A stretch of 63,771 nucleotides of DNA, the filler included, from Hausera hauseri (Eukaryota): the NCBI GenBank assembly GCA_046269625.1. It is 11 parts of 11 records of this genome, joined end to end, with 100 filler letters (N's around TTAATTAATTAA, not from the genome) between each part and the next. Parts side by side here need not be neighbours in the genome. Positions count along the whole stretch, not along the records: positions 27,322 to 31,582 come from JBJURY010670662.1; 10 more parts are not named here. One strand, written 5' to 3'. Below, one piece after another: positions 27,222 to 32,229 of this stretch; the stretch's first letter is position 1, and the number at the start of each line of letters is the position of its first letter. The notes below the pieces were generated by a model. The model was not told where the DNA came from. It saw only the letters and a list, made by a program, of their open reading frames with translations, and made no database searches. Position numbers and translations under genes: made by a program.

Positions 27222-27394
27222 NNNNNNNNNNNNNNNNNNNNNNNNNNNNNNNNNNNNNNNNNNNNTTAATTAATTAANNNNNNNNNNNNNNNNNNNNNNN
27301 NNNNNNNNNNNNNNNNNNNNNAAAATATATTTAAAACATCTGCAAAAGACAATAACGATTGTTATACTCAAGACAAAACAAATAAAGCTACAAG

Positions 27395-27790
27395 TTATTC
27401 TTGTTCAATTGCCTCGTAATTTGGTGGTATCATCGTAATGCATTCAGCGGTTTCGAAATCTGATGCAGTCTTGCTGTGATGAATGCCGTATAAGAAATAG
27501 ATAAATAACCCTAAAAGCCAAATAGGTAATGTCAACTAAATTAAATATGATAACCTATTATTAGCCATATGACAAAACGAATCCAAGTCATTCCTGAAAG
27601 GTTGATTATCAACGTTATGTTCAGAAGGATTGTTAAAAGAGGAATAAAAGGAACAAATGGCACCTAGAAAACATTAAACAATTTCTTCTAGACTATTTAA
27701 AATAAACCTTAAAAGTTGTGAATTCGTCGTGTTGTTCAAATATTTTGAGTAGGAATATACAAAAAGACATTCCTAAAAACAACAAAAGGA
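27395..27790 (-). CDS. cationic amino-acid transporter (SLC7/CAT) C-terminal exons 27708-27790, 27555-27663, 27395-27510
   Basis: TFK|VPFVPFIPLLTILLNITLIINLSGMTWIRFVIWLIIG|LFIYFLYGIHHS is the CAT C-terminal signature. Two 44-nt GT-AG introns. The 5' part is cut off at about 27790. Confidence 0.9.
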
Positions 27791-28048
27791 GGTTGAATCA
27801 TGTCATCTGGACTGCGTTTTTTTTAAGAAAAGTTTAATCTTCTATCTGGAAGACTTTGTCTATCTGTGGCATAGCTACCAGCTCTGTCCCAGAAGCCCTT
27901 GGAAACAAGGGGCTTTAAGTAAAAAGTTTATTTTCTCATTCATCCAGGTAGATAACAACAATAAAAGTTGAATCATGTCATCTGGACTGTGATTTTTTGT
28001 TAAAAAGAAATGTTTCGTCTCTCATCCAAGAGACTTTGTCAATCTGAG
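27791..28048 (-). repeat. two tandem Penelope-pLTR-like units (about 180-nt period) with degenerate hammerhead cores at 27826-27865 and 28006-28045
   Basis: gttgaatcatgtcatctggactg is repeated at 27792 and 27967. The minus strand reads ...gtctct tggatg agagac GAAAC...gtccag...acctggatgaatgagaa. Confidence 0.7.
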
Positions 28049-28128
28049 GGGCTTTAGGCTTTATTTTGACACCAGGGTTAGGGTTCCAACGCTGTCCTCT
28101 CAGTGGTGCGTAGTTTTATTTGTTTTTA

Positions 28129-31100
28129 TTATTCATCTAACCACTCCAGATCCAGTCCTTCACCACAGAAAGACTTCCTTTGGACCCCATAATCAAAGCG
28201 GATCTCTTCGTTTACTGAAATGTCTTTCATTGCCTTAAACAAGATTACATGCCTTTCCCCTTGAGGGAACTGCATAAGGCAATGCACTGGCCTAACGTTG
28301 GGATTCTTTCTGGAGTGGTTGAGTTTTCTTCCAATTGTTTCAATGTCTGGGTGGCACTTGCATGGAAATGTCTGGGCGTCTATGCATAATTTCTGGCCCC
28401 CAGACGAGAAAAAGAAAAGGTAATACATGTTGTCCTTTATGGATTTCAGGATCTGCTCTCCCTCCACTGCTGTAATCACCGTTCCATGGTAATCACATAC
28501 GATGGAACCTTTGATAAATCTTTTAGTGGCAACAACCCCTATGGTGAAAATAAGATCACAAAAAATGTGCATGATTAGAATATGGCCTGTTGGAAATATT
28601 TTGACAGCAGTCTTGATTCTCAATTATTCACAAATCCGTGAAGGGTACATACCTTGTCCTTTGTCATCAGGAAAATGTTGTATCGACAGACCGGACCACT
28701 TCTGCACTGTGACCAACTTGATCAAACGTGGATCACTCTCCACAGTTGTTTTTGGGGCTGGACTCCATTTTGCCACTATGTCCTCTGGCCTGGGATGGTT
28801 GGCAGTCCACCCCTCCTTGGTGATGTCTTTTAAAACAATTTTTAGGCAAGGGGGACGCCTTGTGTATTTAGCTGTAACAACAAGATTTATATTACTCACA
28901 ATGTATGTCCAGAAAGGCCATTTACGGTATTCACATAAGTAGATTTTACTTACAAAACAGATGTTCTTCCCTCTTTGCATACTGGAGTGCCCTCCACTTG
29001 TCATATGAGATCCGGTCCTTAGAGAACCCAGCTTGAACCCTCTGCTTTTTTGTTGGTGGCTGGCCAGCTAGAGTTACTGGAAAGGACTTCAGAAATGCTG
29101 CAAAATCTTCTTGTGGCTCACTTTCGTCAAATTCTCGGTGCCTTTTCTGTGCCCTAGTATGCCTCTCATCACTAGACCCTTCAGAACTGCACACAAACAA
29201 AATTTTAAGGTGAAACATTGAAAACCAGATGCACAAAACTTTGAAGAAGTTGAGAGGGTCCTCACAGCAGCATCATAAAAAGTGAACAATTAAAAGAAAT
29301 ATAATGCATATATACTACGTGTCAATTATTGCACAATGCACACATTCTCCTCTGGTGGTTTCTGTACAACTGCTGTTCTGCAGCTTTCACTCTGTGGGGG
29401 AGGATTGTGGTTGGAGAACTAGGGTTCACATATTAGTCTAATGTGTGCAGATCCAGGCACATACCTTTCCAAGGCACCGATCAAATTGATGGCGAGCACA
29501 GATGTTGATGGGGCCCTCATCCTATAGTGTGCATCAGCAACAGCTGTGGAATGGGCCATATAATGTGCAACATGCTTCTTATCTTCCTCTGTGAGATTTT
29601 GGTTAGCCAGTGTTTCTACAACTCTGCGTACTTCCTGGCTAGTCACATTTGACAACTTGTAGCTGCAATGAGCCAGAAAAATAAAACAAATTAAACCTAT
29701 ATTCTCCTGATGTGCACAGTAAATTTACTAATTTCATTCATACTTACTGTTGGTGCAGACGGTAAAGGTCCTGGGTGGCACTTCTAATGGGTCGTCCATT
29801 AGAATTAATAAAAAATCGGTCCTCCTCTTCTCCAGAGTCTTTTACACATTCGGAGCGAATGTGCCTGTAGTATGTGTCTAGCATCTGTGGAGACAAAATA
29901 TGAATGAAGTTAACTCTCGTGGGATGATTTATGGTAGTATCAATATAAAGCCATGCTAGTTTGTTAGAAAACTTACTGCATCCTCCTCCATGGACAGGGC
30001 AAATGTAGCAATCTGCATTGTTGCTGTCTTATGGCTGCTGACACCTATGACAAGTCTGCCATCACAGTTCTTTCTGTTAAGCCATTCTGAAACCTAGGAA
30101 TCATTGAAGGACAGTGCACATTGTTTATCTGAACAACATGTATACCTTTGTCAACCTTCTAAACTCTGTCCACTGACAAACAGCTGAAAACTGTGCATGA
30201 AGAGTACTTACTGTAAATCCTTCTACCACTCCTGGTCGTTGAAAGTGGTTCAGAATGAGGATCCCTTCACAATAGTAGCGGTACAAGGTTCTCTCCTCAG
30301 ATGACAGTTGCTCCTCTGTTAGGTCTTTTGCGTAAATGCCAAGCATGTCTTTCTTGGCCTCACGCATCAGTCTCTGACAGTCATGCAGGCTTCGCTGGCC
30401 CTCAACATAACGGTCATATCTATTAGAAGAACAAATGCAAAAGTGAATTAGTCTTCTATATCACACATTCTCTTCTGCCCAGTAGACACATAGGTCACAT
30501 AAACAGTGAATAAGCCTTTAAAATATTAAATGGTAGCGTTAAACTAATAACAGACCTGATTTTACATGAAACCCTGCTGTGCTCCTTAGCCATTGGTTTC
30601 CTTAAAGTCCCAAGTAGGTCAACATAGGCCTGGCATTTCCGACTGTACTCCAGGTCCCCCGTAGTGACATACAGGTAAGTGCTCAAAAAGTTTACAAAAC
30701 GGATCATGTTCTTGATGTAGTTTAAAATGGTGGCTGGAGCCATCTTGGCCATCTTGAGGGTTCTGATGAAATCACTTGTTTCGGTGTATTTGGAGAGAAA
30801 GTCCAGGTTGATGTCGTCTCCACAGGGCTGAATGTATCTCAGCATCCTGGACACATTGTCAACCTACAGTGTAAAATGAAAAGCAGTATGAGAGATGTCA
30901 TTAGTGCTTTGATTATGCATATACATACAGATTAGATGGGAACTATATGGCCATGACAGTGGAGAGTTATTAGCTTCTTTTTTTGTCTGTTTCACAAAGA
31001 GATGTTTCAGTCACATGACTGAAACAGGATCTGTTTTTGTTTTTCAACTTTCACAGGAAAGATGAAATATAAACAGCTCTTTATTTGCTCTGTACATCAA

Positions 31101-31336
31101 CTGCTTGTAATTGTAATGGTGTAAGTGTGATCATGCAGAAAGATCAGGCTTGACGCACTTTTTGATTATAAAACATTGGGTTAAATCTTACCTCCTGTTG
31201 ACAGTTTGGGACCAGCAGTGAACTTCTTAGGTGGTCCTTGAATAGCACCAGAAGAGTTGATTCACTAGGGAACTTTTCATACAGCCCCATGTTTTTCATA
31301 GTAAGCCTTACTCCTGTATGGCCTGAAGAGATTGGT
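28129..31336 (-). CDS. spliced tyrosine recombinase-SET domain (KMT5A-like) fusion protein, 5'-partial, teleost-like sequence
   Basis: GT-AG exons 31192-31336, 30556-30863, 30212-30419, 29977-30093, 29748-29884, 29465-29662, about 28953-29187, about 28652-28871 and 28129-28539. YR motifs FQRPG, HKT, EVRR and YMAHS...AHY. SET motifs KGQGVVAT...CDYHG, KLNHS and EEIRFDYG. No stops were seen in the exons. Confidence 0.85.
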
Positions 31337-31427
31337 CTGAGAAGAAACAAACAGAAAATAATCTAAAAAAGCTAAGTCTGGTCCTCTGGACATTCAAAAA
31401 CAAAACAAAGCAAAAAAATAAAATAGT

Positions 31428-31467
31428 AGAAACGTTTCGTCTTTCGTCCGAAAGACTTCCTCAGTCT
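31428..31467 (-). ncRNA. minimal type I hammerhead ribozyme (Penelope-type, dimer-dependent)
   Basis: AGA-CUGAGGA-A-GUCUUU-cggacg-AAAGAC-GAAA-CGU-U-UCU: intact core, stem II, palindromic ACGU stem III, GUU cleavage triplet and AGA/UCU stem I. Confidence 0.75.
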
Positions 31468-32229
31468 GAGATGCTGTATTCAGCTCAGTCTTATAAATAG
31501 CACCCTCTCACAGTGGATCAACCAGTTTGCTGCTGACAGCCAAAACCAGCTGCTCACATGATCAAGGAGGACCATCAGCCTANNNNNNNNNNNNNNNNNN
31601 NNNNNNNNNNNNNNNNNNNNNNNNNNTTAATTAATTAANNNNNNNNNNNNNNNNNNNNNNNNNNNNNNNNNNNNNNNNNNNNCGGTACGGGAACTCCTGC
31701 AACGGAGTCGCTTTATACGACACTTGGTCGGGCTGGAGAGAGATGATCCATATTCTCTCTCAGCAAGCACGCTCCATCGGTTTTACCAGGATGGAGATAA
31801 CCGTCGTCTCTTCGATTCGTCGGTTTTTCTACCGGTATTCCTACGACTAATGGCGGCAACCGATCGACTATATGAATAGCTGGTTCCATCGGAGAGCCAG
31901 CTGATTTCTGACCATCGAGCCACTCACAAGCGGACGGTTATGACAGTGAGCTCCTGCCTAGACAATGTTTCCACACCACTCCGTCGCCTCCGGCTGGAGC
32001 CGGAAAAACTTGAACCAGCATCAACGGATTCCAGTTCAAACGACATTCCAACTTGCTCGCGCCGGAATCAGAGGATTAACGTGGCCCTTTCCTCAACCGA
32101 GGATTCGTATGCCTCGGCGGACGAAATAATGATTAAACAAAATAAGCGTTCGGACTTTTATTTGTTCCTTATTTTGTTCGTCCTTCATCATGTGTTTTAT
32201 TTTAATAACTTTGTAAAACACAAACTCAC

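What the first reader, a model, noticed from the sequence alone, without database searches (positions are those of the whole stretch)
28129..31336. Intact spliced tyrosine recombinase-SET methyltransferase fusion
Seen: at least nine clean exons encode a core-binding-like region (APATILNYIKNMIRF), a YR catalytic set (R in QRP, K in HKT, R in EVRR, H in MAHS, Y in AHY) and a C-terminal KMT5A-like SET domain (NHS, FDYG). It is open throughout, unlike the other mobile elements here. Known: Crypton DNA transposons use intron-containing YRs, and KMT5A methylates H4K20. Inference: a Crypton-like element whose recombinase carries its own chromatin writer. I recall similar teleost proteins being annotated only as KMT5A-like or uncharacterised, not as a defined system.
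Basis: partly seen in the sequence, partly recalled or inferred. Interest (0 to 1): 0.82.

Follow-up and report, generated by a model that had tools for sequence, protein, structure and literature searches.

The report
Fish recombinase fused to histone methyltransferase
This fish gene joins a Cre-like DNA recombinase, of the kind used by Crypton jumping genes, to a KMT5A-type histone methyltransferase; the fusion is real, shared by many fishes and apparently undescribed, but whether it still moves is not settled.

Summary
On the minus strand, nine GT-AG exons (31336..28129) join in consistent phase. All nine map in order onto independently predicted proteins of about 800 aa from bichir, many teleosts and a toad. 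The last exon is a SET domain (Pfam 1e-12) closest to KMT5A/SET8. Exons 2-6 belong to a region that folds, in a relative's model, as a two-domain tyrosine recombinase (Cre/XerA/XerH; Z 11-13). The window copy has R, K, R, H and Y at the catalytic positions, with Q at the first-His position.

Exon 1 starts at a splice acceptor, and relatives carry about 150 more N-terminal residues (a zinc-finger-like domain). That part must lie beyond the piece's edge.

"Crypton-like mobile element" is only partly supported. The family is multi-copy, patchy and deeply split. In other runs the unit's contigs are deeper than contigs of single repeat copies, while this locus's left flank is nearly missing. But no termini, empty sites or RNA were obtained. 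Several relatives have lost recombinase residues yet keep SET, which looks like domestication.

I found no paper describing this architecture. Verdict: a new variant of a known kind, interest about 0.65.

The parts
31192..31336 (-). Exon 1 as seen. It starts at a splice acceptor (ttcttctcAG|A) and has an in-frame ATG at 31299-31297. It encodes the conserved ...VRLTMKNMGLYEKFP...NCQQE segment.
   Evidence: Splice sites and phase. It aligns with residues about 155-196 of P0018 and 158-197 of P0028. Relatives have about 150 more residues upstream.
30556..30863 (-). Exon 2: core-binding (SAM-like) domain of the recombinase part. It contains APATILNYIKNMIRF.
   Evidence: Weak Phage_int_SAM_4 hit at residues 31-61 (E 0.016). 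The same weak family recurs in 9 relatives. 57 homologues found with this exon.
30212..30419 (-). Exon 3: start of the catalytic domain, with the first catalytic Arg (HFQRPG).
29977..30093 (-). Exon 4: beta-hairpin carrying the catalytic Lys (SSHKTA).
29748..29884 (-). Exon 5: middle of the catalytic domain (RFFINSNGRPI...DLYRLH).
29465..29662 (-). Exon 6: the Q-x-x-R motif (SQEVRR), His (MAHS) and the nucleophile Tyr (AHYR).
   Evidence: The fold of the homologous region in models of relatives matches Cre/Xer/Flp catalytic domains.
28954..29186 (-). Exon 7: acidic linker plus a conserved helical segment (FPVTLAGQPPTKKQR...DRISYDKWRALQY).
   Evidence: This region is helical with pLDDT about 90 in both models.
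28653..28871 (-). Exon 8: conserved helical linker and the N-flank plus first strand of the SET domain (...KWSGLSIQHFPDDKGQ).
   Evidence: The family profile aligns this stretch with the N-flank of KMT5A.
28129..28538 (-). Exon 9: SET domain core (CDYHG, PCKCHP insert, NHS, RFDYG), the family's usual C-terminus (LDLEWLDE) and the TAA stop.
   Evidence: Pfam SET 1.1e-12. KMT5A/SETD8 4.6e-10. Residue table.
28115..28130 (-). Two AATAAA polyadenylation-type hexamers (28130-28125 and 28120-28115) at or just after the stop codon.
   Evidence: Read directly from the sequence.
27792..28056 (+). Two tandem partial units (27792-27876 and 27967-28056) of a very abundant short interspersed repeat, directly 3' of the gene. 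In other runs they form part of the deep-contig unit.
   Evidence: Repeat families D1 and D2, alignment, summed depth of 1e5-1e6 and X2 contigs 1-2.
31360..31582 (+). A third copy of the same abundant repeat, directly upstream of exon 1 (in an intron or the 5' flank). It runs to the edge of the piece.
   Evidence: Loose ends at 31360.

Best explanation
The locus is one copy of an undescribed vertebrate gene family, found mainly in ray-finned fishes plus one toad.

Domain order of the product:
- an N-terminal zinc-finger-like domain, seen only in relatives; its exon lies outside this piece;
- a Cre/Xer-type tyrosine recombinase (core-binding plus catalytic domain);
- a conserved helical linker;
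- a KMT5A/SET8-type lysine methyltransferase domain.

The most likely history is that a Crypton-like element (a DNA element that encodes only a tyrosine recombinase and no reverse transcriptase) captured a KMT5A-type SET domain before bichirs and teleosts diverged. The fusion has persisted since as a low-to-moderate-copy lineage.

The copy in the window keeps the recombinase residues R-K-(Q)-R-H-Y and the SET cofactor and catalytic residues. In related genomes it appears to exist as several near-identical copies. I therefore read it as a still or recently mobile or amplifying element.

Inferred mechanism, not shown: the recombinase excises and integrates the unit by strand exchange at a short site. 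The SET domain binds the H4 tail or nucleosome and methylates H4K20 (or another lysine) at the donor or target chromatin. Phe at the SET8 Tyr334 'switch' position predicts di-methylation rather than mono-methylation. That activity could serve chromatin targeting, repair-factor recruitment or self-silencing.
For: Gene model: nine in-phase GT-AG exons, colinear with independent proteins from many species.

Fusion conserved: SET was found in 7 of 10 long relatives retrieved with the recombinase exon alone. Further examples of 795-808 aa come from Oryzias, Melanotaenia and Mugilogobius.

Recombinase fold: the model of P0020 has pLDDT 84.8. All top Foldseek hits are Cre, XerA, XerH, Tn1549 and lambda integrases (E from 3e-4, probability 1.0). 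VIA-align gives Z 12.8 for XerA, and Z 11.7 at rmsd 3.4 A over 162 residues for the XerH catalytic domain. UniRef calls two members 'Core-binding (CB) domain-containing'.

Catalytic residues: present in the window and in members of three deep clades.

SET: Pfam 1.1e-12. The family profile hits KMT5A at 4.7e-22, with the Y334F mutant 3f9w as top hit. The full-length model of P0018 matches SET8 at target-normalised TM-score (TMt) 0.64-0.73 and 31-34% identity.

Transposon-like behaviour:
- Several loci per genome on different chromosomes or unplaced contigs (Melanotaenia 3, Mugilogobius 4, Channa 3, Betta 2).
- At least 5 near-identical copies in Leuciscus, and run-on gene models holding 2-4 head-to-tail copies in Dissostichus.
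- Many truncated predictions.
- At least 4 deep clades, with percomorphs in three of them.
- In run X2, contigs with no mismatches cover 27795-31384 at depth 155-175, against 8-17 for contigs of single repeat copies and about 1.8 for the left flank 27322-27750. Run X4 shows about 50 against 15-36.
- Other organisms hold 0.89 of the sampled words, about what the unit without that flank would give.
Against: - Mobility is not demonstrated. No termini, target duplications, empty sites, circles or RNA were seen. Contig depth is explicitly not a copy number.
- The deep-contig unit includes pieces of an unrelated-looking high-copy repeat at both ends. That fits segmental or tandem duplication as well as transposition.
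- Pfam and NCBIfam do not recognise the catalytic domain, and there is no DUF3504 match. Kinship to described Crypton groups is therefore unproven.
- The first His of the H-x-x-R motif is Q in most of the members tabulated.
- Many intact-looking relatives have replaced the first Arg, the Lys or the His while SET stays conserved. Syngnathus models lack exons 3-6 altogether. This is the pattern of domestication.
- Eight introns and only 1-3 hits per genome among the few RefSeq proteins this limited search returned suit a host gene.
- The 5' end of the window copy is not in the piece.
Confidence: 0.5

Rival explanations
1. It is a domesticated host gene family, a host-transposase fusion analogous to SETMAR or to the Crypton-derived DUF3504 genes. 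An ancient Crypton-type recombinase became a DNA- or chromatin-binding module for a KMT5A-type methyltransferase. The copies arise by ordinary tandem or segmental duplication, not by recombinase-mediated transposition.
For: - SET residues and the family-specific CxCH insert are conserved almost everywhere, whereas recombinase residues are replaced in many intact relatives: Mugilogobius R to L and H to S; O. latipes R to W; Melanotaenia second R to C; Dissostichus_b R to P.
- Syngnathus models keep the core-binding domain and SET but lack the catalytic exons.
- The multi-exon structure is shared with Goodea, whose model skips exactly exon 4.
- Copies cluster in Leuciscus, and run-on models hold head-to-tail copies in Dissostichus.
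- The searches returned only 1-3 loci for the RefSeq-annotated genomes they hit.
- The deep-contig unit in X2 carries flanking repeat DNA with it.
Against: - The full R-K-R-H-Y set is retained in the window and in members of three deep clades after more than 400 My (by the bichir-teleost split). That is hard to explain without selection for catalysis.
- Identity among percomorph members is only about 50%, and the family is patchy with deep paralogous clades.
- Many fragments sit on unplaced contigs.
- The window's left flank is nearly absent from runs that hold the gene with no mismatches.
Confidence: 0.35
2. It is an inactive relic. The copy looks open in the piece but is truncated at the 5' end by the repeat insertion at 31360, or is not expressed. 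It would then have neither recombinase nor methyltransferase function today.
For: - Exon 1 begins at an acceptor, and the 222 bases upstream of it that the piece holds are a high-copy repeat.
- No listed holder of the stretch is on record as RNA.
- A diverged paralogue with a 62-nt gap exists in X4.
Against: - All nine exons are open with intact splice sites, the native C-terminus and all key residues.
- The sequence shows no mismatches over the 3.4 kb covered in another organism's contigs.
- X4 contig 11 continues 611 nt beyond 31369 with sequence unlike the window's. The repeat may therefore be an intronic insertion, or that copy may lie at another locus.
- Absence of RNA runs is not evidence of silence.
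Confidence: 0.1
3. It is an annotation illusion. Two neighbouring genes, a recombinase element and a KMT5A paralogue, happen to lie head to tail and are not one transcript.
For: No RNA evidence was obtainable for this locus.
Against: - The exon phases connect across E6-E7-E8-E9.
- The linker exons 7 and 8 are themselves conserved and structured.
- The same order is found in one protein in bichir, cyprinid, notothenioid, medaka, rainbowfish, goby and eelpout models.
Confidence: 0.03

Closest known systems
Crypton DNA transposons (animal CryptonA / CryptonI groups; Kojima & Jurka 2011, PMC3212892)
   Same: The only enzyme for DNA movement is a tyrosine recombinase. There is no reverse transcriptase. 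Copy numbers are low, fish are among the hosts (medaka, salmon), and no obvious terminal repeats are present.
   Different: Animal Cryptons are described as having no C-terminal domain, whereas here a KMT5A-type SET domain and a conserved linker are fused. There is no DUF3504 or Phage_integrase Pfam match. Termini and mobility were not demonstrated here.
SETMAR (Metnase), the primate SET-mariner transposase fusion (from established knowledge; structures listed in PMC3529403)
   Same: A SET lysine methyltransferase and a transposon-derived DNA enzyme sit in one polypeptide.
   Different: SETMAR has an N-terminal SET domain fused to a DDE mariner transposase and is a single-copy primate gene. 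Here the order is recombinase then SET, the recombinase is a tyrosine recombinase, the SET is KMT5A-type, and the family is multi-copy and old in fishes.
KMT5A / SET8 / PR-Set7 (H4K20 monomethyltransferase)
   Same: It is the best sequence and fold match (4.7e-22; TMt about 0.7 and 31-34% identity). The Tyr245 equivalent (DYHG), NHS, and the Tyr336 equivalent (DYG) are conserved.
   Different: Phe stands at the Tyr334 switch position, as in the Y334F mutant crystallised with dimethyl-lysine (3F9X). A conserved insert of about 7 residues, PC-x-CHP, is present together with extra conserved Cys residues. The domain is fused behind a recombinase, so this is not the KMT5A orthologue.
Crypton-derived DUF3504 genes (KCTD1, KIAA1958, ZMYM2-4, QRICH1, WOC)
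   Same: A recombinase-derived domain is built into multi-domain host proteins.
   Different: No DUF3504 match was found. The window copy keeps the catalytic Arg, Lys, Arg, His and Tyr. The family is multi-copy and fast-evolving rather than conserved one-to-one.
DIRS1-like retrotransposons
   Same: They are tyrosine-recombinase elements that often also carry a methyltransferase-like domain (PMC13465315).
   Different: DIRS elements have reverse transcriptase/RNase H and terminal repeats, and their MT domain is not a SET domain. No RT is encoded here.

Membership tests
Tyrosine recombinase superfamily | Two-domain fold: helical core-binding domain plus catalytic domain | tested here: met
   Tested on relatives, not on the joined window protein. 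P0020 model: Foldseek top hits are all Cre/XerA/XerH/Tn1549/lambda Int. VIA Z 12.8 (XerA); Z 11.7 at rmsd 3.4 A over 162 residues (XerH catalytic domain). The window's exons E1-E7 align to P0020 at 42-51% identity.
Tyrosine recombinase superfamily | Catalytic residues R...K...H-x-x-R...H/W...Y in order | tested here: inconclusive
   The window has R (FQRPG), K (SHKT), R (SQEVRR), H (MAHS) and Y (AHYR) in the right order and spacing. The first His is Q in most of the members tabulated. The assignment rests on motif pattern and family alignment, not on a residue-level structural superposition.
Tyrosine recombinase superfamily | Significant match to a curated sequence model (Pfam Phage_integrase or NCBIfam Xer/Int) | tested here: not met
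   Only sub-threshold Phage_int_SAM_1/_4 hits (9 relatives) and a XerD N-terminus hit (E 0.0063) were found, and nothing for the catalytic domain. No recombinase appeared among the 60 listed PDB hits of the family profile.
Crypton DNA transposon | Encodes a tyrosine recombinase and no reverse transcriptase | tested here: met
   The nine exons and the full-length relatives contain no RT/RNase H. Pfam finds only SET and weak SAM-like hits.
Crypton DNA transposon | Dispersed copies with common ends, insertion polymorphism, or short direct repeats at the termini | tested here: inconclusive
   The deep-contig unit spans at least 27795-31384 in X2 and X4, and the left flank is nearly absent there.
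Crypton DNA transposon | Sequence kinship with a described Crypton group (for example the DUF3504 domain of CryptonA) | tested here: not met
   No DUF3504 hit at E up to 1 in the window exons or in 26 aligned sequences. Repbase and Dfam could not be consulted.
KMT5A/SET8-type SET methyltransferase | SET fold with cofactor and catalytic residues (Tyr of DYHG, NHS, Tyr of DYG) | tested here: met
KMT5A/SET8-type SET methyltransferase | Tyr at the Phe/Tyr switch (Tyr334), which gives monomethylation | tested here: not met
   The window and most relatives have Phe (RFDYG / KFDYG). The best PDB hit of the family profile is the Y334F mutant.
Domesticated host-transposase fusion gene | Single syntenic orthologue per species under purifying selection, with the transposition function lost | not testable with these tools
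   No fish genomic context could be fetched. Indirect signs point both ways: catalytic substitutions in many relatives, but a full catalytic set in the window and several loci per genome.

The most novel reading that the evidence does not exclude
An active vertebrate Crypton-type transposon whose recombinase is permanently fused to an H4K20 methyltransferase predicted to be a dimethylase. It would write a chromatin or repair mark at its own excision and integration sites. The extremely abundant short repeats that bracket it, each carrying a conserved 6-6-6 palindrome, would be its recombination targets or non-autonomous partners.
Probability: 0.15. Interest if true: 0.88.

Novelty: new variant of a known kind. 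Interest (0 to 1): 0.65.

Why it matters
Transposon enzymes fused to chromatin readers are known (chromodomain integrases). One SET-transposase fusion, SETMAR, is known as a primate domestication. In the papers I could search, I found no tyrosine recombinase carrying a histone-lysine methyltransferase.

If the element is mobile, it would be the first Crypton with its own chromatin writer. It would offer a direct test of how a DNA element uses H4K20 methylation for targeting, repair or self-silencing.

If it is domesticated, it is a new, old and repeatedly duplicated vertebrate gene family that pairs a sequence-recognising recombinase scaffold with a KMT5A-type enzyme. Some members still look catalytically competent for recombination.

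Either way, dozens of fish genes now labelled 'KMT5A-like' or 'uncharacterized' would get an explanation.

Tried and rejected
1. Direct repeats D1 (28006-28056 and 31428-31478) as the element's attachment sites or termini. I dropped this. Both belong to a repeat with summed depth of 1e5-1e6. A third copy lies at 27826-27876. The right copy sits upstream of an exon that begins at a splice acceptor. The little hairpin is no more stable than in shuffled sequence (z -0.1 to -1.1). The 'joints' that skip about 3430 nt are ordinary copies of that repeat aligning in register.

2. Sequence-model detection of the catalytic domain. Pfam, NCBIfam and a family profile against PDB gave nothing significant for the recombinase part. 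Only fold comparison did.

3. Rfam scan of the piece for a SINE or tRNA origin of the flanking repeat: no hit.

4. RNA evidence for splicing: no listed holder of the stretch is on record as RNA.

6. Literature search for the zebrafish gene name (dkey-23a23.2), 'KMT5A-like', and YR plus SET domain: nothing relevant. CryptonV turned out to be a cnidarian group.

Exons were translated and searched one by one by reference, so no whole-protein search or fold of the window's own product exists. The folds are of relatives P0020 and P0018.
Full report
**Scope and limits**

Only window 27322-31582 was used. Each exon was translated and searched on its own by reference, so the two folds reported here are of relatives, not of the window's protein. 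No fish genomic context could therefore be fetched.

**1. The observation**

The gene lies on the minus strand. Stop-free blocks and a splice-site and phase scan give nine exons. All have GT-AG borders, and their phases fit one another:

| Exon | Coordinates | Phase at 3' end |
|---|---|---|
| E1 | 31336-31192 | ends on a codon boundary |
| E2 | 30863-30556 | +2 bases |
| E3 | 30419-30212 | supplies 1 base; ends on a boundary |
| E4 | 30093-29977 | ends on a boundary |
| E5 | 29884-29748 | +2 bases |
| E6 | 29662-29465 | supplies 1 base; +2 bases |
| E7 | 29186-28954 | supplies 1 base; +1 base |
| E8 | 28871-28653 | supplies 2 bases; +1 base |
| E9 | 28538-28129 | supplies 2 bases; TAA stop at 28131-28129 |

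Two AATAAA hexamers overlap or follow the stop. From the ATG inside E1 (31299-31297) the exon lengths sum to 1938 nt, which is 645 codons plus the stop.

The exons, each on its own, align in order with independently predicted proteins. These include Zoarces (P0018, 799 aa), Polypterus (P0028, 783 aa, named 'si:dkey-23a23.2'), Dissostichus, Oryzias, Melanotaenia, Leuciscus and others, at 29-67% identity. The split codons predicted at the junctions reproduce residues seen in relatives, for example ...CKI-R-YDRYVEGQR.

There is one correction. E1 starts at an acceptor site. Relatives carry about 150-200 residues before the E1-equivalent. That region has a C-x2-C...H-x4-C motif and folds confidently in the P0018 model (residues 12-105); a feature search of the first 150 residues points to a C2H2-type cluster as a lead only. 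It is followed by an acidic disordered stretch. No such exon is in the piece, because a high-copy repeat fills 31360-31582. The 5' end is therefore unverified, and 'intact' holds only for what can be seen.

**2. What the parts are**

SET domain:
- E9 matches Pfam SET at 1.1e-12.
- Among solved structures it matches KMT5A/SETD8 best, at 4.6e-10.
- A profile of the family reaches 4.7e-22 and extends into KMT5A's N-flank, which E8 encodes.
- The full-length model of P0018 (pLDDT 82.6) matches SET8 structures at target-normalised TM-score (TMt) 0.64-0.73, 31-34% identity and about 3.2 A rmsd.
- The Tyr of DYHG, the NHS motif and the Tyr of DYG are kept.
- The Tyr334 'switch' position is Phe in the window and in most relatives. 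The top PDB hit of the profile is the SET8 Y334F mutant. That mutant series includes a complex with dimethyl-lysine, 3F9X.
- The family also has a conserved insert, PC-x-CHP, and extra conserved cysteines that KMT5A lacks. This may be a zinc site, but it was not tested.

Recombinase:
- Curated sequence models see only the core-binding domain, and only weakly. The window's E2 hits Phage_int_SAM_4 at 0.016. Nine relatives hit Phage_int_SAM_1 or _4. One relative hits the XerD N-terminus at 0.0063.
- UniRef independently labels two members 'Core-binding (CB) domain-containing protein'.
- The fold evidence is clear. A model of P0020, which covers E1-E7 (pLDDT 84.8), has only tyrosine recombinases as top Foldseek hits: Cre, XerA, XerH, Tn1549 integrase and lambda integrase, with about 350-390 aligned columns in nearly all rows and probability 1.0.
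- VIA-align gives Z 12.8 for XerA. For the catalytic domain alone it gives Z 11.7 at rmsd 3.4 A over 162 residues against XerH, followed by Flp, lambda and SSV1 integrases and type IB topoisomerases.
- In the family alignment the window has R (HFQRPG), K (SHKT), R (SQEVRR), H (MAHS) and Y (AHYR), in the order and local contexts typical of these enzymes. The first His of H-x-x-R is Q in most of the members tabulated.

Linker: exons 7 and 8 are conserved and helical. The two enzymes are therefore joined by a structured region, not by an accident of annotation.

**3. The family**

The recombinase exon E2 alone retrieved 57 clusters from 1.84 billion representatives. Of the ten longest, seven carry a SET domain, at the C-terminus in six. 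Further fusion proteins of 795-808 aa come from Oryzias latipes, O. javanicus, Melanotaenia and Mugilogobius.

Members occur in bichirs, cyprinids, many percomorphs and the toad Bombina.

A quick maximum-likelihood tree (the careful search did not finish) shows at least four deep groups, with percomorphs in three of them. Dissostichus has members in two groups. The window's nearest relatives are goodeid, Ilyodon and unnamed Logan/ENA fragments, at 55-73% identity. Full-length relatives are only about 50% identical.

**4. Mobile element or host gene?**

For mobility or recent amplification:
- Several loci per genome lie on different chromosomes or unplaced contigs (Melanotaenia 3, Mugilogobius 4, Channa 3, Betta 2).
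- Leuciscus has at least five near-identical copies. Dissostichus run-on models hold two to four head-to-tail copies.
- There are many truncated predictions.
- The full catalytic set survives in three deep clades.
- Six differently labelled organisms hold the stretch. In X2, contigs with no mismatches cover 27795-31384 at depth 155-175. Contigs of individual repeat copies have depth 8-17, and the left flank 27322-27750 has about 1.8. In X4 the figures are about 50 against 15-36.
- The 0.89 share of words held by X2 and X3 is about what the unit without that flank would give.
- X4 also holds a diverged paralogue of about 88% identity with a 62-nt gap. It also holds a contig that leaves the window's sequence at 31369 and runs on for 611 nt.

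Against:
- Contig depth is not a copy number, as the tool itself warns.
- The deep-contig unit carries pieces of an abundant repeat at both ends, which suits segmental duplication too.
- No ends, empty sites, circles or RNA were seen.
- Eight introns are present.
- Many intact-looking relatives have replaced the first Arg, the Lys, the second Arg or the His while SET and its insert stay conserved. Syngnathus models lack E3-E6 altogether. That is how domesticated recombinase genes look.

My estimate:

| Reading | Probability |
|---|---|
| Mobile or recently amplifying Crypton-like element in this genome | about 0.5 |
| Domesticated multi-copy host gene family | about 0.35 |
| Inactive relic | about 0.1 |
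| Two separate genes | about 0.03 |

I put the chance that the fusion protein family itself is real at above 0.9.

**5. How it probably works**

What is shown is the architecture, the folds and the residues. The rest is inference from established knowledge of tyrosine recombinases and of SET8.
- The recombinase part would bind a short site through its core-binding and catalytic domains and exchange strands through a 3'-phosphotyrosine intermediate. This would allow excision as a circle and reintegration, as proposed for Cryptons (PMC3212892).
- The SET part would dock on the H4 tail or nucleosome as SET8 does. With Phe at the switch position it could go beyond monomethylation.
- Possible uses are choosing or marking chromatin at the integration site, recruiting factors that read H4K20 methylation during repair of the recombination site, or dampening the element's own expression.
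- In lineages that lost recombinase residues, the scaffold may serve only to bring the methyltransferase to DNA.

**6. Comparison with what is known**

- Kojima and Jurka state that animal Cryptons have no C-terminal domain.
- Fungal and oomycete Cryptons carry GCR1_C or a separate peptidase.
- DIRS elements carry a non-SET methyltransferase-like domain.
- SETMAR joins SET to a DDE transposase.
- DUF3504 genes are Crypton-derived, but no DUF3504 match exists here.
- Searches of about 8.4 million papers found no description of a tyrosine recombinase with a SET domain, nor of these 'KMT5A-like' fish genes.
- Repbase Reports and Dfam could not be consulted, so prior cataloguing there is not excluded.

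**7. Verdict**

This is a new variant of a known kind: a Crypton-like recombinase, or a gene derived from one, with a captured KMT5A-type SET domain. Interest is 0.65.

Noticed in passing
window 27792-27876, 27967-28056 and 31360-31582: Three copies of a short interspersed repeat bracket the gene. Its contigs sum to a depth of 1e5-1e6 in four runs. They share a core: GTTGAATCATGTCATCTGGAC, then an A/T-rich stretch, then AGAAAyGTTTCGTCT, then a 6-6-6 palindrome, then GACTT..TCTGAG. The palindrome differs between copies by paired changes (GTCTCT/AGAGAC, GTCTTT/AAAGAC, ATCTTC/GAAGAC). It is no more stable than in shuffled sequence. There is no Rfam match.
   Followed up: partly
window 31369 onward (run X4, contig 11): A contig of another organism matches 30170-31369 and then runs on for 611 nt that are unlike the window. 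Either the repeat at 31360 is an insertion missing there, or that copy lies at another locus. The missing 5' exon may be on it.
   Followed up: no
window 30241-30450 (run X4, contig 12): A diverged paralogue of exon 3 and its flanks, with 18 differences in 147 nt, a 62-nt skip (30241 to 30304) and a TAA insertion at 30420. Its depth is about a third of the main copy's.
   Followed up: no
relatives P0076, P0079, P0054 (Dissostichus eleginoides, one 311-kb contig): Predicted proteins of 984-3363 aa contain two to four complete head-to-tail repeats of the E1-E9 order. This suggests tandem arrays with short spacers that the gene finder ran together.
   Followed up: partly
relatives P0043, P0071, P0072 (Syngnathus typhle): These gene models keep E1-E2 (core-binding), E7-E8 and SET but lack the whole catalytic region E3-E6. 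They look like a natural 'recombinase-dead' form of the family.
   Followed up: no
exon 9, window about 28290-28330; relatives in A1/A3: A family-specific insert, PC-x-CHP, lies inside the SET domain. With conserved Cys in CDYHG and LCID it could form a metal site that KMT5A lacks.
   Followed up: partly
relatives only (e.g. P0018 residues 12-105); not in the piece: A conserved N-terminal domain with a C-x2-C...H-x4-C motif, confidently folded as a beta-hairpin plus helices, followed by an acidic disordered stretch. Protein-atlas features point to C2H2-type proteins, which is a lead only.
   Followed up: partly
window 28502-28942, + strand: A 146-aa ORF runs antisense to the intron 8 / exon 8 region. 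It is most likely a by-product of the coding strand and was not searched.
   Followed up: no
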